A DNA stretch of 64,000 nt from Rebecca billardiae RCC1528 (taxonomy: Eukaryota > Protista > Haptophyta): NCBI GenBank assembly GCA_965240325.2, contig OZ251229.1:1116001-1180000 (forward strand). Direction: 5' to 3'. Below, piece by piece: positions 12,350 to 51,027 of this stretch (its first letter is position 1; every line of letters begins with the position of its first letter). The notes beneath the pieces are model-generated. The model made no database searches. It saw nothing but the letters and a program-made list of their open reading frames with translations, and had not been told where the DNA came from. Made by a program: the position numbers and the translations under genes.

Positions 12350-12613
12350 CGTCGCTGGCGCGCTAAGCGATCGTCGTGGCCCGCGTGGCGTCGTCCGATG
12401 AGGCGATGAAGAGATGCGTGTTCAACACGCCGGTAGGCCGGTTGCCGCTTCCGGGGGGGGGCTAACGGGCTTCGACCGAGCTCGCCCGGCACCGGACTTC
12501 TGACGAAATCGGCGTGTCTTGCTCAGGGCGTGGCCGACGACGCCATTGTCACCCGCCGATCGCCTTCGGCGCGGCGCATGACGTCGTCAAGGCGTCATGG
12601 GCCCGGGGCGGCC

Positions 12614-13858
12614 ATGCCGGCGCAGTGGCGAGTCGCCGTGCTCGTCGCCGGCGCCGCTCTGCTCGCTCCAAGCCCGCTGGGGGCGCAGCCCATCGCACCA
12701 TCCTTCGCTGCGCCGGCCCGCGCGGCAAACGCCAGCGCGCCGGCGTGCCGCGTCGTTGCCTTCCTGCACGTGCCCAAGTGCGCGGGCAGCAGCGTGCGCT
12801 ACATGTTCAAGCGGGGCTCGCCGGGGACGTGGCGCTGCCCGAACATCTGCACGCAGCTGAGCAGCGTGTGCAAGGCGTGGGGCTGCGACAAGACCGAGCC
12901 GCTGCCCGAGTCGCACGTGCAGCGGTGGCGGAAGCGAGGCCTCCCGCCGCTCGACGCGCGCACCGAGCCGCTCTGGTTCTTCGAGCGGCACTGCGGGCCG
13001 AACCTCGAGCGCTTCGCGCGTTGGCTGCCCAAGCTGCGCCGGCACGCCGAGTCGCGCGGCTGCCGCTTCGCCGCGCTCACCCTCCTCCGAGATCCGATCT
13101 CGATGCTTCTCTCGGACTTCTCCTTCTTCGGCGACTACTCGGACCGGGCCAACCTCAGCCTGAGCCAGTGGGCGCGCTCGCACCCGGAGCTGCTGCTGCT
13201 CGACGAGGACCAGCACCTGGACACGCAGCGGGTGGTGCCCGCGCTCGAGCGCGCGCGGCAGGGCAAGTACGCCCCCTCCGTCCCCGAGCCCGCCGTGCGC
13301 CACCTCGAGGCGCTGCGGCGCGCGTACGCGGACGCGCAGCTCGCGTTCGTGCGGCACATGCCGACGCTCACGGCGGAGCTGCGCGCGGAGGGCGGCGCGC
13401 GCAGGGCGGCGTGGATGGCGCGCAGCGCGCGGCTGCAGCAGGCCTCGCTCGCGGCGCGCGCGCGCTGGCTGCAGGCGCTCCGCGCGGCGGGCGTGCTCAG
13501 CTGCGAGCGCCTCCTCGCCGCCGTCGAGCCGCTCCTGTCCCTCTTCGACGTCGTGGGCGTGGTCGATCGGTTCGCAGAGTCGATGCTGCTCACGACCGAG
13601 GCGCTCGGCATGCGCGGGGTGCCCACGCTGCGCTTCAGTAACAGCAGGCGGAGGGCGGGCGACGCGGCGGGGCGCGCGCGGCCGAACGCCGTCGAGCTCG
13701 ACGAGATGCTGCCCGGCCTGCGCGCGCTCAACAACTGCTCGATACAGCTCGTCGATCGCGCGCGTGCGCGGCTGGATGCGCGCGTGGCGCGGCGCGGAGA
13801 CGCCTTCCACGCTCGACTCGCGCGCGCGCGCGAAAAGATGCGCCCACCGGATCGCTGA
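12614..13858 (+). CDS. Secreted/Golgi sulfotransferase-like protein
   Basis: Signal peptide MPAQWRVAVLVAGAALLA, 5'-PSB motif FLHVPKCAGSS, 3'-PB motif LLRDPISMLLS and C-terminal VGVVDRFAES. Confidence 0.82.
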   Translation: MPAQWRVAVLVAGAALLAPSPLGAQPIAPSFAAPARAANASAPACRVVAFLHVPKCAGSSVRYMFKRGSPGTWRCPNICTQLSSVCKAWGCDKTEPLPESHVQRWRKRGLPPLDARTEPLWFFERHCGPNLERFARWLPKLRRHAESRGCRFAALTLLRDPISMLLSDFSFFGDYSDRANLSLSQWARSHPELLLLDEDQHLDTQRVVPALERARQGKYAPSVPEPAVRHLEALRRAYADAQLAFVRHMPTLTAELRAEGGARRAAWMARSARLQQASLAARARWLQALRAAGVLSCERLLAAVEPLLSLFDVVGVVDRFAESMLLTTEALGMRGVPTLRFSNSRRRAGDAAGRARPNAVELDEMLPGLRALNNCSIQLVDRARARLDARVARRGDAFHARLARAREKMRPPDR

Positions 13859-14107: not shown

Positions 14108-15712
14108 TCAGTCAACGGCCGCGTCGCGCGCGAGCCTGAAGCCGGCGTGCTGGTAGAAGTGCGGCCTGAAGAAGTTGCGCGCGCGCACGCACGCGTACGC
14201 CCCGCTCGACGCGAAGCTGCCCCCGGCGACGACAAAGTGCGCGCCGTCGAACGCGGGCGCCGAGAAGTCCGGGTAGAGGGGATGCGGGCAGAAGCCGTCG
14301 AGCGGCGCGACCGCGTCCGCGCACAGCTCCCACACGTTGCCCATCAGGTCGTGGTGCCCGCTCGGCGAGGGCGGCATGGCGTGCACCGGGCTCTCGGTGC
14401 CCCAGCGCAGGCCGATGTTCGCGCCGTCGGCGGTAGCCGCGGCGGGCGCTGCGTCGACGGCGAGCGTGCGCAGCAGCGTGTGCTCCGCCTCGCGCAGCGG
14501 CCGGTACGGCGCGCGCGCGCACCCCTCCGCCTGCGTGCGCCACGCGCAGTACGCGAGCGCCTCGTGCAGGTTCACCACCGCCGGCCAGTCCCACGGCATG
14601 GGGTGCACGCTGAAGGTCGAGCGGAGGAAGCGCGGCGCGTCGGCGGGCGCGCCCTCCGGCGCGCGCTCCCAGAACCGCGGCTCCGTCGCGCCGCAGCCGC
14701 GCCGCCACGCCCAGCCCTCGTCCGACCACAGCTCCCGCCGGCCGTACCCGCCTGCGGCCACAAACTGACGAAACGCGCCGTTGCTCACGAGCGTCGACGC
14801 GGCCTCGAACGGCGGGACGCGCACGCGGCGCGAGCCGAACTCGAGGTCCCAGCCGTACGCGCGCCCCGCGCCCGCGCCCGTCGCGGGGCCGCGGCCGAGC
14901 TGCACCTCGCCGCCCCCGTGCGGCACGAGGGCAGAGGCGGGGGGGTACTCGCGCCCGGCGGCAGGCGCGCCGACGCCCGTGGCGCGCGCGGCCGACGGGT
15001 GGTCGGCCGGCCAGCGTGCGGGCCTCTGCAGGCTCGCGAGGTCCATCTCGCGGAAGAGGACCGACGAGGTCTCGATGTGCACGCGCTGGTGCTCCACGCC
15101 CATGAGCAACGCCCACAGCGGGTGCTCCGCCGTCACGCGCGCGGGCCCGGCGCCGCCGCCGAGCTCGGGCTGTCGTTCCGCCGCCTCCCACACGCGCGCG
15201 CGCACGCGCTGCCGGAACGCGCGCACGTCGGCGATCGCGGGCCACTCGCGCTCGTTCAGGCTCATGTCATCCGCTGGCATCTCGTCCACGCCGACCTCGA
15301 AGAGCTGCTCAAAGTGCGGCTGCTCGCGCTCGTCCTCGCCCAGCAGGCCTGCTGCCACGAGCTTGTTCACGTAGAACGCGGCGGCGTGGCCGTAGTAGAA
15401 GACCTGGGGGCGGCGCAGGTTGTGCCATGGCGGCTCGAGGAACGCCTCCTCGCCGTTGAGCCCGCTGAACAGGGCGTCGTCCAGCCGCCAGGCGTCGTCG
15501 ATGTACGCGCGCACGCGCTCGCGCGTCAATCCGTGCGCGTCGAGGGCTGCCATGGCGGGCGTCGTGGCCGGCAGCGGCGGGGCCGTGAGCCACGACGCGT
15601 CGTCGCGCTGGCCGGAGAGCCACGCCTCACCGCGCAGGTTGGCTCGCCACGCGGCCCCCGCGCCGGGCGCCGCGCCCGGCATCGTGGCGAGGGCGCGGGC
15701 GAGTCGCGACAT
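14108..15712 (-). CDS. OvoA-clade non-heme iron sulfoxide synthase (DinB-like + FGE-like domains), no C-terminal methyltransferase domain
   Basis: LRRPQVFYYGH..FYVNKL, FEVGVDEM, metal motif MGVEHQRVHIETSSVL, YGWDLEFG, VSNGAF, PWDWPAVVN, GNVWE, HPLYPDFS, GGSF and HFYQHAGFR followed almost immediately by a stop. Intronless, 534 aa. Confidence 0.92.
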   Translation of the reverse strand: MSRLARALATMPGAAPGAGAAWRANLRGEAWLSGQRDDASWLTAPPLPATTPAMAALDAHGLTRERVRAYIDDAWRLDDALFSGLNGEEAFLEPPWHNLRRPQVFYYGHAAAFYVNKLVAAGLLGEDEREQPHFEQLFEVGVDEMPADDMSLNEREWPAIADVRAFRQRVRARVWEAAERQPELGGGAGPARVTAEHPLWALLMGVEHQRVHIETSSVLFREMDLASLQRPARWPADHPSAARATGVGAPAAGREYPPASALVPHGGGEVQLGRGPATGAGAGRAYGWDLEFGSRRVRVPPFEAASTLVSNGAFRQFVAAGGYGRRELWSDEGWAWRRGCGATEPRFWERAPEGAPADAPRFLRSTFSVHPMPWDWPAVVNLHEALAYCAWRTQAEGCARAPYRPLREAEHTLLRTLAVDAAPAAATADGANIGLRWGTESPVHAMPPSPSGHHDLMGNVWELCADAVAPLDGFCPHPLYPDFSAPAFDGAHFVVAGGSFASSGAYACVRARNFFRPHFYQHAGFRLARDAAVD

Positions 15713-15976: not shown

Positions 15977-17110
15977 ATGGCGCGAGCACTGTCAGTCCTT
16001 CGGCGAGCCAGAGCCGGCGGGTTCGGCGCACCGCTCGCGCGAGCGCTGCGCACCACTCCGAAGACTCGATCGGAAGCGCTCGCCCCCGAGCCGCTGGGCG
16101 ACGACCCCGAGGCTGACGAGCGCGCCGACATCCTCGCGGCGCTGAGCGCACCGACGCCGTCCATCAGCTGCGTGTACCTGTACGACGCGCACGGCTCCGC
16201 GCTGTTCGAGCAGATCTGCGCGACCGAGGAGTACTACCTCACGCGCACCGAGGACGCGCTGCTCAAGGCCATCACCCCCGAGCTCATCCGCTTTGCCGAC
16301 GAGCCACGCGACGCCACGTCGCTGAGCGGCACATGCATGGTCGAGTGCTCGGCGGGCAACGGGCAGAAGGTGGCGCCGGTGGTGCTCGCGTCCTCCGCGA
16401 TCAGGCCGACGACGTACGTCCCGATGGACGTCTCCGCCTCCGCCCTCGACGCCAACGCCGCGCGCCTCGCGCCCCACATCGGCGCGCGCGCCCTGCAGTT
16501 TGAGCCGCTGGTCGGCACGAACGAGGATGGGCTGCGGACCGCGGCGCAACTGGACGGGCGCAAGTGCTACATGCTGCTCGGCTCGAGCCTGGGCAACGCA
16601 ACCGAGCCGCACGAGGAGCTCCGGATGGTCGCGGAGCACATGCGCCCCGCGGACCGCCTCGTCGTCGGCATCGACACGCCGCCGAGCGCGCCCGGCTCTG
16701 GCGGCAAGACGGAGGCGGCCGTGGTCGCCGCGTACAATGACGCGGCGGGGATCACCTCGGCGTTCACGCTGAACGCGCTGACGCACCTCAACCGGATCGC
16801 CGGCACCGACTTCGACCTCGCCGACTTCCGCCACGTCTCCGAGTGGTGCCCGGAGCGCAGCGCGATCCTAGCCTACGTCGAGGCCGCGCGCGACGTGACG
16901 GTGCACGCGCGGCCGAGCGCAGACGCGGCCGCGACGAGGGTGCTCTCGCTGCGGGCGGGCGAGCGGATCTTCATGGAGCAGTCGGCCAAGTTCGGGCTGG
17001 AGCACATGCGCCAGATCGGTGGGCGCGCGGGCCTGCGCCCCGTGCGCCACTGGCTGAGCGAGCGCGACTACTACCTCATCATCGAGTACGCGCTCGCAGG
17101 CTCCAGCTGA
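15977..17110 (+). CDS. EgtD-family (Methyltransf_33) SAM-dependent amino-acid N-alpha-methyltransferase
   Basis: YLYDAHGSALFEQI...EYYLTRTE, YVPMDVSASAL, LGSSLGN, AYNDAAGITSAF, DFDLADFRHV and GERIFMEQSAKF are colinear with EgtD. Intronless. Confidence 0.92.
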   Translation: MARALSVLRRARAGGFGAPLARALRTTPKTRSEALAPEPLGDDPEADERADILAALSAPTPSISCVYLYDAHGSALFEQICATEEYYLTRTEDALLKAITPELIRFADEPRDATSLSGTCMVECSAGNGQKVAPVVLASSAIRPTTYVPMDVSASALDANAARLAPHIGARALQFEPLVGTNEDGLRTAAQLDGRKCYMLLGSSLGNATEPHEELRMVAEHMRPADRLVVGIDTPPSAPGSGGKTEAAVVAAYNDAAGITSAFTLNALTHLNRIAGTDFDLADFRHVSEWCPERSAILAYVEAARDVTVHARPSADAAATRVLSLRAGERIFMEQSAKFGLEHMRQIGGRAGLRPVRHWLSERDYYLIIEYALAGSS

Positions 17111-18486: not shown

Positions 18487-20099
18487 GTAATAAGTAGTCG
18501 CGCAGTATGCGCATTATATTATTATATAATAGGAGTCGACCGAAGTCGGACGCCAGTCCGGTGTCCGTGACGACTCACAGTCGGAGTCAGTGACAGTAGT
18601 CACATGCTGGTCGTGCCTTGTGCCCGTGGCCGACCGCTGTGAGGCTGACTTCGCTGCGGCCCGTGAGCCAACCTGAGAGTGACTACACTCGGCGGACTTC
18701 GCCTTCCGCGCCGCTTCTCGGACACAGTCACATAGCACTCCCGCGCCTCAAGTTGAAGAGTGCCGCCGCCGTGGCTCGGCCTCGGTGGCCCGCGGCCTGT
18801 GGGTCCGGATAGTGGAATAGCGACCGAGCGCCCAACACTCAACAGGCAACACCGCAGGCTGCGCAGGTGATTCGGAGTGAGCAAGCGGGCGGGCGGCGCG
18901 GGCGTCGCGTGCGAACTACGTGCAGGTGCGCTCGGCGAGAGCCTTCCCAGCGGCAGGGTGGGGCTGACCGCCACCCACGCTCTCCGTCGGCCCAGGGTCG
19001 CCGGGCCGCCGCGGCGCGTCAAGTCGCCGATGGTCGGGCAGTACGGCGCGGCGCCACTGCTCAAGCCAACACGCGCAGCCCAGCCGGGTAGGGGGGGGGA
19101 GCGTAGCACGCAACGCTTCGCACTCGCAGTGCGGAATGGGGCTGACCGCCAACCACGCTCTCCCTCAGGCTCAGACCCGCGCCTGCGCGGGTGGCGCCGC
19201 CGACTTACTGGCACCTGCCACTCGAAGTCCTGACACGCGCACGGGCCGAGGGCGCAGGCGGCAGGACGCGCCTTGCCCGACGGAGCCCGCGCCACGGCCG
19301 CAGCTGACTGGCTGACTGCGTGAGCAAGCGGGAGGCGGGTCCGGAGGCACGTGCAGGCGTGCTCGGGGAGAGCGTGGGCGGCTCGCGCCCGTCCACCGGT
19401 AGTTGTCGATAACGACTATATATATTGCGGACGTGCCCGCCTTTTCGGCTTTTCGGCACGAATAATAATCAATGATCGATGTCTAAACAAGGAGGTAGCA
19501 GGTTTCAAAAATCGAAACTCGGTCTGCACCAGCCCAGAGCCCTTGAAAATCGTCCCCGACCCCGTGGCCCTGCGCGTTCCGCCCTGCACCGCGGGCCATG
19601 ATTCACCGGCGACACAGACCAGTACGACGATGGATGGGTGGCGGTGGTGATGCGCGCGCGCGCGGTGCATCTTGGCCTGCCTGCGCGATCGAGCGCGTGC
19701 TGGGCCAGATGGGCCTGCCGCGGCCCACCAGCGGTGGAACGCCTCGCGCGAGCGCAAGACGCGCTCGGCGGTACCGTCGCTCGAGCCGCTGCGGCCCTCC
19801 TCCGCCTCCGAGCCCTCGCCGCCCGGCGCGGGGAGCAGCCCGACGCGGCCGAGCGTCGGCAGCGTCGCGGCGGCGCGCACCGGCGTGCGCGCGGGCGGCA
19901 GCGCGTGCGCCGACTCGGGCGTGCCGCGCGCGGCGGGGCGGCGCGGCGGCGGCGAGGCGCCGACAGCGAGCGGCCGGCCGTCCGGCCGCGAGCCGTCGTC
20001 GTACAGCGCGCGCAGCGTGCCGAACGCCGAGCCGTGGTACGAGATCGCCGAGAAGGCCTGCAGCGCCATCTCCTCGGCTCGCGGCGGGCGCACGCCGCT

Positions 20100-20833
20100 T
20101 CGCCCACGCACGCACGCCGCCACCCGTCCGCGGGCTGAGGCGCCGGCCGCTTGCGCGGCGCGCCGTCGCCCGGCTCGACGCTCCGCACCACCGCCGCGCG
20201 CGCGTGCTCGTCGGGGAGCAGCTTGTCCAGCTCGGGCGCCAGAGCGCGCACGTCCACCCCGACCGCGCGCAGCATGCGCTCGACGGCTGCGCGCACGCGC
20301 GTCGGCTCGAGGCGCTCGATCGTCTTGGACGCGCCGAGGGTGGCGTTGAGCCCACCGCAGTGCTCAGACTGCCGCAGCCAGTGCCGGTTGCGCACGCGCC
20401 CTCGCCCGAGCGCTGCCGCCGCCTCGTCGAAGCTGGGGCGCGCGACGCCGAATGCTGCCTCCGAGCAATGGCGTGCGCCGTCCATGTCACGGCCCACGGT
20501 GCACTTGGACGCGTACGCCGAGGCGAAGCGCTCGAGCGGCTCTCTGTAGAAGACGGCGGCGTGCCACGTCGGGTCGGCCAGCCGCGCCGCGGCGTCCTCC
20601 ACGCCCAGCCCGAAGTAGCGCAGCGTGTTGGTGTTCTGCACGAACCCTGCTTGAGCAGCGCCGGGTCGTGCGGCGTGCTGACCGCGCGGAAGAGCTGCAG
20701 GAAGCTCTGGCTCGCGACCTTGTCGACCTTGCAGAAGAGGATGAGCCGGTACTCCGGCACGAGGATGAAGGAGCTGTACGAAACGAACGCGGCTCAGCGC
20801 CACCGCCGCCGTCGCGTTGCTCGCGCCCGCCAT
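20100..20833 (-). pseudogene. Carbohydrate sulfotransferase (Sulfotransfer_2-like) with frameshifts
   Basis: FCKVDKVASQS lies in one frame, while REPLERFASAY and RHWLRQSEHC lie in another. Frame changes occur at about 20790 and 20645. The 3' end is uncertain. Confidence 0.7.
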
Positions 20834-21010
20834 TGTGCGCGCGGCAACATCGCGGCAGGCATACAATTCCGCTCCGACGAAGCTGAGTAGCTGAGCACCC
20901 CTCGAATCTGGATCGCGGTCGGGCGGACGCGTGCACGTGTGCAGTAGCAAGGGTGGTCGCAGTAGCAAGCCCTGTACAGCTCGTCTCCACGCGCGCCCGC
21001 CAGGGTTAGG

Positions 21011-21636
21011 CTGCCGGGCGACGCGCGCGCCAGCCGGTGCGCTGCGCACAAGCTGGTCGGCATGGTCGACCTGAAGAGCCGCAAGTGTGATCACACCGGC
21101 TGCACCAAGCATCCTTGCTTCGGCATGCCGGGCGACGCGCGCGCCAGCCGGTGCGCTGCGCACAAGCTGGCCGGCATGGTCGACGTGAGGAGCCCCAAGT
21201 GTGATCACACCAGCTGCACCACGCGGCCTTCGTTCGGCATGCCGGGCGACGCGCGCGCCAGCCGGTGCGCTACGCACAAGCTGGCCGGCATGGTCGACGT
21301 GAGGAGCCCCGAGTGTGATCACGTGGACTGCACCAAGCAGCCTTTGTTCGGCATGCCGGGCGACGCGCGCGCCAGCCGGTGCGCTGCGCACAAGTTGGCC
21401 GGCATGGTCGACGTGAGGAGCCCCAAGTGTGATCACACCAGCTGCACCACGCGGCCTTCGTTCGGCATGCCGGGCGACGCGCGCGCCAGCCGGTGCGCTA
21501 CGCACAAGCTGGCCGGCATGGTCGACGTGAGGAGCCCCAAGTGTGATCACACCAGCTGCACCACGCGGCCTTCGTTCCGCATGCCGGGCGACGCGCGCGC
21601 CAGCCGGTGCGCTACGCACAAGCTGGTCGGCATGGT
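21011..21636 (+). repeat. 114-bp coding tandem repeat, about 5.5 copies
   Basis: ATGGTCGAC recurs at 21062, 21176, 21290, 21404 and 21518. Confidence 0.95.
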
Positions 21637-21937
21637 TAACAGGCGGCTCGCCCTGCCCAAGCGCAGGCTGGAGCATGGCACCGGCGACCCGGGCACGCTT
21701 GCAGCGAAGCGACAGCACACGCACACCAGCCGCATTGCCACGAACTCGCATGCCGCCATGCAGCTGCCCCAAGCGCCGCCGCTGGTCGGGAGACTCGAGA
21801 GAGGCAACGGGGCGGATTGCCGAATGCCGCCAGACGGTGTCGGTGATGGCACAGACACCGTCACCGACGATGAGGAGTCGTCTGACCATTGGACGGTGAT
21901 GGCATCCGATCTGATGTCATCGTCCTCCGAAGAGTGA
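21062..21937 (+). CDS. EsV-1-7 cysteine-rich repeat protein
   Basis: Five-plus 38-aa repeats of MVDVRSPKCDHTSCTTRPSFGMPGDARASRCAxHKLAG (C-x4-C...C-x2-H). A likely splice acceptor at 21003 suggests an upstream exon. Confidence 0.85.
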   Translation: MVDLKSRKCDHTGCTKHPCFGMPGDARASRCAAHKLAGMVDVRSPKCDHTSCTTRPSFGMPGDARASRCATHKLAGMVDVRSPECDHVDCTKQPLFGMPGDARASRCAAHKLAGMVDVRSPKCDHTSCTTRPSFGMPGDARASRCATHKLAGMVDVRSPKCDHTSCTTRPSFRMPGDARASRCATHKLVGMVNRRLALPKRRLEHGTGDPGTLAAKRQHTHTSRIATNSHAAMQLPQAPPLVGRLERGNGADCRMPPDGVGDGTDTVTDDEESSDHWTVMASDLMSSSSEE

Positions 21938-48939: not shown

Positions 48940-51027
48940 TCATGCAGTCTCGCTACTATGGCGACTGTCGGCGACAGCAGCCTCCGCCGGCACATCAGCC
49001 GGTGGCGCCGCCGCGCTGGGACCGGGCGGCAGTGTCTGTGTCGGTGAGTCGGGCAGCGCGTTCAGAGGCGGCGGCGCGGGCGCGCACTTGTCGTCCGACG
49101 CGCGCCGCTGCGTGAGCGTCGTGGCTGCCGGCGTGGCGGCGTGGCGTGGCGAGCGGATCGCGCCACCGCCGCACGCGATCGCCACGTGTGCTGGGCCGGG
49201 CGCACCATCCGCCGTGAGCGCGCCGCCCGCTCGCGGCTCGCCATCGCGCGCATCCTCGGCGCCACCGGCGCGGGCGGGGGCGCTCCCCCGCGGCGCGCCG
49301 CCCGCCTGCTCAGACACGCGCTCCAGCTCTGTCACCGCGTACGGCGCATCGCGCGCCTTGGCGCCCGCGCGCGCGCGCGCGCGCCTGCGCGCGTGCTGCC
49401 AGCACAGCGCCATCGGCACGCACGCCATCGGCCCGACGCTCAGCAGCCAGCCGAAGCCGAGGAACCAGCCCGGGAAGCCGCCGTACGGCCGCGCGATCTC
49501 CGAGTAGCACTGCAGCGCGAAGAGCACGGTGAGCAGCGCGGGCAGGAACCAGCACCACGTGAGCTCGAGCCAGCGCGCGCCCGGGAGCTCGCCGTTGGCC
49601 GCGCCCAGCTCGTCGAGCAGCCGGCGCGCGCCGTACACGCGCGAGACGAGCAGGCACTCGCCGAGGGCGGTGACGACCGTGAGGAACATGGGGAGGAAGT
49701 GGTTCGCCAGGTCGATCCAGTACTCGCCGGCGTGGCTGACGTACGGCAGCCCCGTGAGGAAGCCGGCGGCGTGCAGCGCGGCGGGCAGCACGGCGCGCGC
49801 GCGCTCGCTCGCCAGCCACGGCAGCCGGCTGCGCCGCGCCTCCTCCACGAGCGCGACCGTGAGCGGAGACGTCATCGACGCGGCCGAGCTCACGCCGAGG
49901 TTGAGGAGCATCACGAAGAAGGCGGCGGCCCAGAAGCGCGGCGCGGGCATGAGCGAGACGGCGGTGGGGAACACCTCGAACGCGAGCGACGAGCCGCCCT
50001 CCGCCACCTCGCCCACGCGCACGCCGTCCACGCGCGCCATGTGCCCGAGGAAGGCGAACACGACGAGCGCGGCCAGCAGCGAGAAGGCCGAGTTGCCGAG
50101 GCACACGGCCGCCGCGCTCGAGAGCGTGCGCGTGCCGCGCGGCGTGTACGAGGCGTACGTGGTGAGCGTGCCCAGCCCCGCGCTCACGCCGAAGAAGATC
50201 TGCGAGACCGCCATCATCCAGATCTCGGGCCGGGCGCCGAGCACCGCCCAGTCGGGCGTGAGCAGCGCGCGCACGCCGTCGAGCGCGCCGTCGAGCGTGA
50301 GCCCGCGCACGAGGAGCGCGAGCAGCACGAGGAAGGGCGCGGGCATGAGCAGCTGCACCAGCCAGCCGAGCGAGCGCGCGCCGCCCTGCACCCCCGCGTA
50401 CACCAGCGCCCACACGAACGCGTACGCCAGCGCGAGCCGGCCGACCACGCCGTCCGGCCGCTCGACCGAGCCCGACGACTCGAGCACGAGCCGGAAGTAC
50501 TCGGCGGCGCGGCCGTCGCTCCAGGGCTGCGGGGTGCGGAAGGACGCGAGGAGGTAGACGACGCAGTACGCGAGCAGCGCGTTGTACATCTGCGAGACGA
50601 GGAACGTGCCGATCACCGCCGCCCAGCCGAACCCGACCGCCTGCGGCATGATCCGCTTGCACATCTTGACGTGCCCGAGCTGCAGCGTCTGACCGAGCCC
50701 GAACTCGAGCACGACGATCGGGATCGCGGTGAAGAAGAGGGCGAGGACGTACGGCACGAGGAACGCGCCGCCGCCGTACTCGAAGGCGAGCAGCGGGAAC
50801 CGCCAGATGTTGCCGAAGCCGATCGCGCTGCCGATCGAGGCGAGCACAAAGACGAACGGGGACGACCAGCGCTCCCGCTCGGCCTCGGCGGGCGGCGCGG
50901 CGGCCGGGTGCGGCGGCGGGCCGGCGTCCGAGCCGACGGCAGGAGGATCGTCCTGCAGCCGCGCCGGGCGGTGCTGCCGCCGGCCGGACGCGGCGGACGC
51001 CGCGCTGCGCTGGCTGGCGTCCCCCAT
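48940..51027 (-). CDS. SLC6/NSS sodium:neurotransmitter symporter family transporter
   Basis: RERWSS..FVLASIGSAIGFGNIWRFP..GGGAFLVPY, QIFFGVSAGLG..YASY and about 12 TM segments. Intronless. Confidence 0.95.
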   Translation of the reverse strand: MGDASQRSAASAASGRRQHRPARLQDDPPAVGSDAGPPPHPAAAPPAEAERERWSSPFVFVLASIGSAIGFGNIWRFPLLAFEYGGGAFLVPYVLALFFTAIPIVVLEFGLGQTLQLGHVKMCKRIMPQAVGFGWAAVIGTFLVSQMYNALLAYCVVYLLASFRTPQPWSDGRAAEYFRLVLESSGSVERPDGVVGRLALAYAFVWALVYAGVQGGARSLGWLVQLLMPAPFLVLLALLVRGLTLDGALDGVRALLTPDWAVLGARPEIWMMAVSQIFFGVSAGLGTLTTYASYTPRGTRTLSSAAAVCLGNSAFSLLAALVVFAFLGHMARVDGVRVGEVAEGGSSLAFEVFPTAVSLMPAPRFWAAAFFVMLLNLGVSSAASMTSPLTVALVEEARRSRLPWLASERARAVLPAALHAAGFLTGLPYVSHAGEYWIDLANHFLPMFLTVVTALGECLLVSRVYGARRLLDELGAANGELPGARWLELTWCWFLPALLTVLFALQCYSEIARPYGGFPGWFLGFGWLLSVGPMACVPMALCWQHARRRARARAGAKARDAPYAVTELERVSEQAGGAPRGSAPARAGGAEDARDGEPRAGGALTADGAPGPAHVAIACGGGAIRSPRHAATPAATTLTQRRASDDKCAPAPPPLNALPDSPTQTLPPGPSAAAPPADVPAEAAVADSRHSSETA

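What the first reader, a model, noticed from the sequence alone, without database searches (positions are those of the whole stretch)
14130..14290. EgtB-like RNFF substrate motif on an OvoA scaffold
Seen: the C-terminus reads RARNFFRPHFYQHAGFR, the catalytic-type Tyr of HPLY is kept, and GVDEMPADD replaces the usual GVDEMSWDD. Known (from recall): OvoA typically has RYAFRRHF here, while EgtB has RN[FW], with the Asn and aromatic residue contacting the trimethylammonium of hercynine. Inference: the enzyme has switched toward an N-alpha-methylated histidine substrate, possibly independently of the cyanobacterial case.
Basis: partly seen in the sequence, partly recalled or inferred. Interest (0 to 1): 0.78.

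Follow-up and report, generated by a model that had tools for sequence, protein, structure and literature searches.

The report
Algal OvoA-derived ergothioneine-type sulfoxide synthase
A haptophyte-like alga carries an ovothiol-synthase relative that has lost its methyltransferase domain, has gained the Asn-aromatic pocket typical of ergothioneine enzymes and sits head-to-head with a histidine trimethylase gene, so it probably makes ergothioneine by a route that arose separately from the cyanobacterial one.

Summary
The 534-aa single-exon ORF (14108-15712, minus strand) ends in RARNFFRPHFYQHAGFR, keeps HPLY and reads GVDEMPADD in the lid loop.

The protein scores as an OvoA N-terminal sulfoxide synthase (TIGR04344, 455 bits) but has no C-terminal methyltransferase domain. 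Its closest solved relatives are the cyanobacterial EgtB-IV enzymes, which read RNWF, followed by OvoA, which reads RYAF.

A gene 264 bp away on the other strand encodes an EgtD-type histidine N-alpha-methyltransferase. It keeps every polar histidine-binding residue.

Among about 100 OvoA-like representatives that have a C-terminal extension, none with a class-I methyltransferase domain has Asn plus an aromatic residue at this site.

A careful ML tree puts the window protein in a small clade of methyltransferase-less RN[FY]F proteins from eukaryotes. That clade is nested inside methyltransferase-bearing R[FY]HF OvoAs and lies far from cyanobacterial EgtB-IV. AU tests reject both alternatives (p=0.037 and p=0.008).

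The EgtD gene is 61-67% identical to those of Pavlovales sp. CCMP2436 and Diacronema lutheri, but the two genes are not adjacent in those genomes.

The scan had also noted the gene pair on this same window (s1-360703).

The parts
14108..15712 (-). Single-exon CDS (534 aa plus stop) of an OvoA-scaffold non-heme-iron sulfoxide synthase with DinB_2 and FGE-sulfatase domains and no methyltransferase domain
   Evidence: ORF. Pfam PF03781 and PF12867. TIGR04344 ovoA_Nterm 454.9 bits against a cutoff of 400, covering residues 63-527. AF2 model pLDDT 89.4, pTM 0.92. Foldseek top matches 8VIG/8VIH EgtB-IV (TM 0.91 by target), then 8KHQ OvoA.
14168..14176 (-). N513-F514-F515, the Asn-aromatic triad at the histidine/hercynine-binding positions. 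OvoA has (Y/F)(A/H)F here and EgtB-IV has NWF.
   Evidence: Composite motifs from PMC11030361.
14135..14185 (-). C-terminal signature RARNFFRPHFYQHAGFR (residues 510-526). The ORF ends 8 residues later.
14273..14284 (-). HPLY with the catalytic-type Tyr480. F483 (Y+3, 14264-14266) keeps the OvoA state.
   Evidence: Y480 is invariant in alignment A1. It is equivalent to Y406 of OvoA_Th2.
15077..15091 (-). EHQRVH with iron ligands H208 and H212. Q209 replaces the Glu conserved in OvoA, as in EgtB-IV.
15386..15415 (-). LRRPQVFYYGH with R100 and Y106 (cysteine-binding positions) and H109 (first iron ligand). R101 replaces the conserved OvoA His.
   Evidence: OvoA_Th2 R62, Y68 and H71.
15266..15292 (-). 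Lid-loop motif GVDEMPADD (OvoA: GVDEMSWDD), with the conserved Trp lost
   Evidence: Lid role from PMC10696552.
15713..15976 (.). 264-bp divergent intergenic spacer between the two start codons, with lower GC (putative shared promoter region, inferred)
15977..17110 (+). Single-exon CDS (377 aa from the first ATG) of an EgtD-type SAM-dependent histidine N-alpha-methyltransferase
   Evidence: PF10017 239 bits. TIGR03438 208.7 bits, below the 290.9 cutoff. PDB EgtD 4PIM E=7e-32. Equivalents of Y39, F47, Y56, N166, Y206, T213, E282 and S284 all conserved. 61-67% identical to the Pavlovales sp. CCMP2436 and Diacronema lutheri proteins.

Best explanation
The ORF encodes a mononuclear non-heme-iron sulfoxide synthase that descends from a bifunctional eukaryote-type OvoA. 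It has lost the C-terminal N-pi methyltransferase domain and has a remodelled histidine pocket. The changes are Y/F to Asn513, His to Phe514, Glu to Gln209, Asn to Leu290 and Glu to Tyr506.

I infer that it now prefers hercynine (N-alpha-trimethylhistidine) over histidine and joins cysteine to imidazole C2, as EgtB-IV does. The divergently transcribed neighbour is an EgtD-type methyltransferase that would supply hercynine. A C-S lyase encoded elsewhere would complete ergothioneine synthesis.

Shown here: the domain architecture, the motif states, an intact 3-His/Tyr catalytic set, the gene adjacency, and the phylogenetic nesting inside OvoAs and apart from cyanobacterial EgtB-IV.

Inferred: substrate preference, C2 regiochemistry, co-regulation of the two genes, the final product, and the host being a haptophyte near the Pavlovophyceae.
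For: - Family and fold: TIGR04344 at 455 bits; the EgtB and SenA models score far below their cutoffs. The best PDB sequence and fold matches are EgtB-IV 8VIG and 8VIH, solved with hercynine.
- Motif: the composite motif fits EgtB-IV RxYH--DxHxHYxNWFx except for W to F. NFF is the EgtB-II state, and SenA has N(F/Y)(F/Y). In OvsA, the M401Y/Q430N/A431F swap alone moved preference from histidine to hercynine and from C5 to C2.
- Architecture: there is no methyltransferase domain in the ORF, downstream of it, or anywhere in the 64 kb.
- Neighbour: EgtD lies 264 bp away with all its histidine-binding residues kept. The cyanobacterial RNWF homologue P0099 likewise sits in an egtD-egtB operon.
- Distribution: in the 150 best representatives of 1.8 billion proteins, Asn plus an aromatic occurs in 4 of 27 methyltransferase-less proteins and in 0 of 98 with a class-I methyltransferase.
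- Phylogeny: RN[FY]F clade 100/100; with methyltransferase-bearing RFHF P0076 99/93; inside the R[FY]HF OvoAs 100/99; inside OvoA 100/100; EgtB-IV outside. AU p = 0.037 against one clade of all RN-aromatic proteins. AU p = 0.008 against OvoAs excluding the clade.
- Co-occurrence: run SRR30872635 holds both an RNYF synthase (P0002) and an EgtD homologue (P0121).
Against: - No enzyme assay, metabolite data or expression data exist for this locus.
- OvoAs already accept hercynine to some extent, so the motif may tune preference rather than create it.
- The aromatic residue is Phe or Tyr, not the Trp of EgtB-IV. F483 and the cysteine-binding residues keep the OvoA state.
- The closest relative, P0233, has Thr instead of Asn.
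- The pairing with EgtD is not conserved. In Diacronema lutheri, Pavlovales sp. CCMP2436 and three other contigs, no synthase lies within 8 kb of EgtD. Relatives P0002 and P0003 have RPL22e upstream instead.
- EgtD scores below the NCBIfam equivalog cutoff.
- No C-S lyase was found among the large ORFs of the window.
- The sequences have a skewed composition, which can affect trees.
Confidence: 0.7

Rival explanations
1. It is still an ovothiol-type synthase: histidine plus cysteine, with the C-S bond at C5. N-pi methylation would be supplied in trans or omitted, and the EgtD-like neighbour would be unrelated or would N-alpha-methylate later, as in ovothiol B or C.
For: The scaffold passes the OvoA N-terminal equivalog model. 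R100, Y106, D143 and F483 keep the OvoA state. The adjacency is not conserved in relatives. Ovothiol B occurs in diatoms.
Against: None of the 98 representatives bearing a class-I methyltransferase has Asn plus an aromatic at this site. E209, N290 and E506, conserved in OvoAs, are all replaced. No methyltransferase domain exists in the window. The equivalent Asn/Phe swap in OvsA abolished the histidine preference.
Confidence: 0.1
2. It makes a different N-alpha-methylated thiohistidine. It could use mono- or dimethylhistidine, or place sulfur at C5 of hercynine, giving a betaine that is not ergothioneine.
For: The pocket is a hybrid: Asn and Phe as in EgtB-II, but F483 and the lid base as in OvoA, and no Trp. 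The degree of methylation by this EgtD was not tested. Its position 252 is Ala rather than Met.
Against: OvoA gives ergothioneine-type C2 chemistry with both dimethylhistidine and hercynine. EgtD position 252 varies among annotated bacterial EgtDs, and all polar contacts are kept.
Confidence: 0.12
3. The switch is not independent. The protein shares the Asn state with cyanobacterial EgtB-IV by common descent, by retention of an ancestral state, or by transfer of an egtD-egtB operon.
For: With EgtB as outgroup, the deepest OvoA-like lineages (RNWF, RLWF) lack the methyltransferase domain, and EgtB itself has Asn-aromatic, so Asn could be ancestral. EHQR[VI]H is shared with EgtB-IV. The first AU test is only marginal, p = 0.037.
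Against: The clade is nested three well-supported nodes deep among methyltransferase-bearing OvoAs. AU p = 0.008 against placing it outside them. It shares GVDEM..DD and FRPHF with eukaryote-type OvoAs, not the GVDP lid of EgtB-IV. The window EgtD is only 31% identical to the EgtD of the cyanobacterial operon. The genes are head-to-head, not co-directional.
Confidence: 0.05
4. It is a selenoxide synthase of the SenA type that uses a selenosugar donor.
For: The N(F/Y)(F/Y) triad equals the SenA composite motif.
Against: The SenA model scores 128 bits against a cutoff of 420. The donor-binding positions (R100, Y106, D143) are OvoA/EgtB-IV-like. No senB or senC homologue was seen among the large ORFs.
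Confidence: 0.03

Closest known systems
EgtB-IV (type IV ergothioneine sulfoxide synthase of cyanobacteria; PDB 8VIG, 8VIH; Liao & Seebeck 2017; Ireland et al. 2024)
   Same: OvoA-like scaffold without the methyltransferase domain. Asn followed by an aromatic residue and Phe at the hercynine site. Gln after the second iron His. Loss of the OvoA residues W147, N290 and E506. Encoded beside egtD. Best sequence and fold match.
   Different: About 34-38% identity. Phe or Tyr instead of Trp. The lid is GVDEM..DD, not GVDP. Eukaryotic, single-exon and head-to-head rather than an operon. Phylogenetically it does not belong to the EgtB-IV clade; it is nested in methyltransferase-bearing OvoAs.
OvoA (5-histidylcysteine sulfoxide synthase / N-pi methyltransferase; PDB 8KHQ), eukaryote-type R[FY]HF subgroup
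   Same: Passes TIGR04344. Same 3-His/Tyr site and cysteine-binding R and Y. 42-52% identity to algal and oomycete OvoAs. The sister, P0076, is a methyltransferase-bearing OvoA with the same Pro-containing lid.
   Different: No methyltransferase domain. (F/Y)H replaced by N(F/Y). Conserved H101, W147, E209, N290, W463 and E506 all replaced. Paired with EgtD.
EgtB-II / SenA hercynine pocket (PDB 6QKJ, 8K5J) and the engineered OvsA-YNF (8UX5)
   Same: Identical Asn-Phe-Phe / N(F/Y)(F/Y) triad. Published contacts are Asn dipolar and Phe cation-pi to the trimethylammonium.
   Different: These belong to the other deep branch of the family, with about 22% identity in the fold alignment.

Membership tests
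OvoA (bifunctional ovothiol synthase) | N-terminal DinB plus FGE-type sulfoxide synthase domain matching TIGR04344 above its cutoff | tested here: met
   454.9 bits against a cutoff of 400
OvoA (bifunctional ovothiol synthase) | C-terminal SAM-dependent N-pi methyltransferase domain | tested here: not met
   The ORF stops 8 residues after GFR. No methyltransferase Pfam hit. tblastn with six OvoA methyltransferase domains finds nothing in 64 kb.
OvoA (bifunctional ovothiol synthase) | Histidine-site composite F-(Y/F)-A-F, or (F/Y)HF in eukaryote-type members | tested here: not met
   The window protein has F-N-F-F
OvoA (bifunctional ovothiol synthase) | 3-His iron site and catalytic Tyr | tested here: met
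   H109, H208, H212 and Y480 are conserved
EgtB-IV | OvoA-like scaffold that lacks the methyltransferase domain | tested here: met
EgtB-IV | Composite motif RxYH--DxHxHYxNWFx (Kayrouz et al.) | tested here: inconclusive
   All specified positions match except W, which is F here. The strict published rule would file it under 'other'.
EgtB-IV | Co-encoded with egtD | tested here: met
   A PF10017 gene lies 264 bp away on the other strand. This is not conserved in relatives.
EgtB-IV | Common descent with the cyanobacterial EgtB-IV clade | tested here: not met
   Careful tree. AU p = 0.037 and p = 0.008.
EgtB-IV | Hercynine plus cysteine plus O2 gives the C2 sulfoxide | not testable with these tools
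   Needs an enzyme assay
EgtD (histidine N-alpha-trimethylase), neighbouring gene | Methyltransf_33 fold with the histidine-binding residues Y39, F47, Y56, N166, Y206, T213, E282 and S284 | tested here: met
   PF10017 at 239 bits. All eight residues conserved. The TIGR03438 equivalog cutoff is not reached: 208.7 against 290.9.

The most novel reading that the evidence does not exclude
The pair does not make ergothioneine but an undescribed thiohistidine betaine. The hybrid pocket (Asn-Phe from the EgtB type; F483, the cysteine site and the lid base from the OvoA type) could place sulfur at C5 of hercynine or act on a partly methylated histidine. That would give pavlovophyte algae a thiol chemotype of their own.
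Probability: 0.12. Interest if true: 0.8.

Novelty: new variant of a known kind. Interest (0 to 1): 0.62.

Why it matters
Ergothioneine is regarded as a product of fungi and certain bacteria, which plants and animals acquire from them (abstract of PMC7653990). In the literature I could search, the only algal thiohistidine enzymes reported are ovothiol-type OvoA homologues.

If this pair is active, a lineage of eukaryotic phytoplankton makes ergothioneine. That would be a new marine source of it.

It would also be a second, independent natural conversion of OvoA into an EgtB-like enzyme. The changes are the same few as in the cyanobacterial case: methyltransferase loss, Asn plus an aromatic, and replacement of E209, N290 and E506. 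This gives a natural replicate for asking which residues set substrate choice and regiochemistry in this enzyme family.

The wider search hints that methyltransferase loss together with Asn gain has recurred several times across the OvoA tree.

Tried and rejected
- **Reads and expression:** No run ids were available, so read laying could not be used either.
- **Hidden methyltransferase exon:** I looked for one downstream and across the window and found none.
- **Conserved synteny:** the two genes are not adjacent in Diacronema lutheri, Pavlovales sp. CCMP2436 or contigs L012-L015. A tblastx comparison of the neighbourhoods was uninformative because GC-rich frames gave noise.
- **Literature:** Ireland et al. 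2024 on the EgtB-IV structure (PMC11560578) is not held. The supplements of Kayrouz et al. are not held. I found no paper on a type V EgtB or on ergothioneine in pavlovophytes or haptophytes.
- **Pocket geometry:** distances to hercynine could not be measured because the tools do not expose model coordinates.
- **Bacterial signals:** the promoter and terminator scan was empty, as expected for a eukaryote.
- **Lid motif as a hercynine contact:** rejected. The loop covers the cysteine pocket, and the change predates the Asn switch (P0076).
- **Organism:** it was not named directly. Only the nearest EgtD homologues point to the Pavlovophyceae.

Full report
**Observation.** The region lies in a 534-aa ORF on the minus strand (14108-15712). 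Coding GC is about 75% and the flanks are AT-richer. Its C-terminus reads RARNFFRPHFYQHAGFR (residues 510-526, 14135-14185).

**What the protein is.** Pfam finds FGE-sulfatase and a weak DinB_2 domain. NCBIfam places it above the cutoff of the OvoA N-terminal model TIGR04344 (454.9 against 400, residues 63-527). The EgtB model (122 against 360) and the SenA model (128 against 420) fall far short. No methyltransferase domain is present. The ORF stops eight residues after GFR. The downstream minus-strand ORFs have no Pfam hit. tblastn with six OvoA methyltransferase domains finds nothing in the 64 kb.

The best solved relatives by sequence are the cyanobacterial EgtB-IV enzymes 8VIG and 8VIH (E = 5e-87 and 4e-79), which read RNWFRP. 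Next is OvoA_Th2, 8KHQ, which reads RYAFRR and GVDEMSWDD. An AlphaFold2 model built on a 43-sequence alignment is confident (pLDDT 89.4, pTM 0.92). Its best fold matches are the same EgtB-IV entries, solved with hercynine, and then OvoA.

**Meaning of the motif.** Kayrouz et al. compress this enzyme family into composite active-site motifs (PMC11030361):

| Family | Composite motif |
|---|---|
| EgtB-IV | RxYH--DxHxHYxNWFx |
| EgtB-II | ...YNFFx |
| SenA | ...YN(F/Y)(F/Y)R |

The paper reports dipolar contacts of the Asn and cation-pi contacts of the following Phe with the trimethylammonium of hercynine. It also reports that OvsA M401Y/Q430N/A431F switches from histidine and C5 to hercynine and C2.

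The window protein reads R100, Y106, H109, D143, H208, H212, Y480, F483, N513, F514, F515. It therefore meets the EgtB-IV composite except that Phe replaces Trp, and NFF is the EgtB-II triad. The iron ligands and the catalytic Tyr are intact.

The lid motif is a different matter. Residues 98-117 of OvoA_Th2, which hold GVDEMSWDD, are described as the lid over the cysteine sub-pocket (PMC10696552). The methyltransferase-bearing RFHF sister protein P0076 already reads GVDEMPGDD. So that change is not evidence for hercynine binding.

**Other remodelled positions.** I compared five clade members with 27 OvoA-type sequences. The clade lacks the residue that is at least 85% conserved in OvoA at H101 (R/K), W147 (A/S/H), E209 (Q), I211 (V), N290 (L/V), W463 (L/H) and E506 (Y/F). 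Three further such positions (71, 79, 260) and three conservative replacements (274, 495 and I211 itself) are also listed. EgtB-IV also lacks W147, N290 and E506, and mostly has Gln at 209. I infer, without coordinates, that replacing two conserved Glu residues by Gln and by an aromatic residue fits a pocket for a quaternary ammonium.

**Is RN-aromatic found in real ovothiol synthases?** In the word searches, every methyltransferase-bearing homologue had R[YF][AH]F, and RN[FYW]F occurred only in methyltransferase-less proteins. A profile search of 1.84 billion representatives gave 150 best hits, of which 126 had a readable motif. Asn is present in 8 of 27 methyltransferase-less proteins against 2 of 99 with a C-terminal extension (Fisher p = 6e-5). 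Asn plus an aromatic is present in 4 of 27 against 0 of 98 with a class-I methyltransferase. The two exceptions are P0338 (RNTF with a methyltransferase) and P0365 (RNFF fused to a SET domain, on a very long branch).

**Neighbour.** The ATG at 15977 lies 264 bp from the synthase ATG, on the other strand. It opens a 377-aa ORF. It matches Methyltransf_33 at 239 bits and TIGR03438 egtD at 208.7 bits, below the 290.9 cutoff. It matches solved EgtD at E = 7e-32.

The histidine-binding residues named for mycobacterial EgtD are Y39, F47, Y56, N166, Y206, T213, E282 and S284 (PMC8593015). All are conserved here and in nine close homologues. T163 is Ser, as it also is in the EgtD of a cyanobacterial egtD-egtB-IV operon. 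Position 252 is Ala, at a site that varies (M/T/I) among annotated bacterial EgtDs. I see no sign of a changed substrate. The RNWF homologue P0099 lies in an overlapping egtD-egtB operon, which shows what this pairing means in bacteria.

**Origin.** The closest EgtD homologues (61-67% identity) are from Pavlovales sp. CCMP2436, Diacronema lutheri and unnamed GC-rich contigs. The window is therefore probably from a haptophyte near the Pavlovophyceae.

A careful IQ-TREE analysis (59 rows, LG+C20 PMSF, EgtB outgroup) gives the following nesting:

| Grouping | Support (UFBoot/SH-aLRT) |
|---|---|
| Window protein with P0002, P0003, P0004, P0032 (all methyltransferase-less, RN[FY]F) | 100/100 |
| That clade plus methyltransferase-bearing RFHF P0076 | 99/93 |
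| Both inside the R[FY]HF OvoA group | 100/99 |
| That group inside OvoA | 100/100 |

The RNWF EgtB-IV sequences and a methyltransferase-less RLWF group branch outside. Forcing all RN-aromatic proteins into one clade costs 59 lnL units (AU p = 0.037). Forcing the OvoAs into a clade that excludes the window's clade costs 43 lnL units (AU p = 0.008). With more sampling, methyltransferase-less P0233 (RTYF) becomes the clade's sister (99), and the nesting holds.

The simplest history is duplication of a bifunctional OvoA, loss of the methyltransferase domain, and replacement of F/Y-H by N-F/Y. This happened separately from the cyanobacterial event. Two caveats apply. Many rows, including the window's, have a skewed composition. 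The second AU group was defined after I had seen a tree.

**Conservation of the pairing.** The pairing is not conserved. No synthase lies within 8 kb of EgtD in D. lutheri, CCMP2436 or contigs L012-L015. The RNYF genes of P0002 and P0003 have RPL22e upstream. The two genes do co-occur in one run, SRR30872635 (P0002 and P0121). The head-to-head arrangement therefore looks like a lineage-specific rearrangement, not an inherited operon.

**Not done.** No C-S lyase was seen among the ten large ORFs scanned. The EgtB-IV structure paper and the Kayrouz supplements were not available. Searches of the held literature found no report of an OvoA-derived EgtB or of ergothioneine synthesis in haptophytes.

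**Verdict.** It is a new, independently evolved eukaryotic variant of the known EgtB-IV solution. Its activity still has to be shown.

Noticed in passing
L006:4001-6680 (Saprospirales MAG, P0090): The large methyltransferase-less RLWF group of OvoA-like proteins is not next to egtD. Here it is followed by an ATP-grasp gene, which fits the thiohistidine-dipeptide clusters of PMC13674229.
   Followed up: partly
P0365 (745 aa): An OvoA-like sulfoxide synthase with RNFF is fused to a C-terminal SET domain (PF00856) instead of the class-I methyltransferase. It sits on a very long branch.
   Followed up: partly
P0233, P0268, P0287, P0289, P0304, P0308, P0311: Methyltransferase-less OvoA-like proteins with Asn or Thr at the same site (RTYF, RNNF, RNAF, RNYF, RNWY) are scattered over the OvoA tree. 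This suggests recurrent methyltransferase loss together with a pocket change.
   Followed up: partly
window 15533-15712 (-) and 15977-16150 (+): Both proteins carry Arg/Ala-rich N-terminal extensions ahead of the conserved domains. Part of the synthase extension (LRGEAWLSG.RD) is conserved in P0002 and P0003. These may be organelle presequences; diatom OvoA is reported to be mitochondrial (PMC9890322).
   Followed up: no
L009:4985-7820, L012:5093-7810: In Diacronema lutheri and a related contig, EgtD is head-to-head with an 877-905 aa protein with no Pfam hit, not with the synthase.
   Followed up: no
window 12530-13858 (+) and 19505-21889 (-): The ORFs flanking the pair look sulfotransferase-like. 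One has an FLHVPKCAGSS motif, and the other has a weak PF03567 hit at 22.6 bits. Any link to sulfur metabolism is unknown.
   Followed up: no
window 48940-51027 (-): A sodium:neurotransmitter symporter family (PF00209, 365 bits) transporter gene.
   Followed up: no
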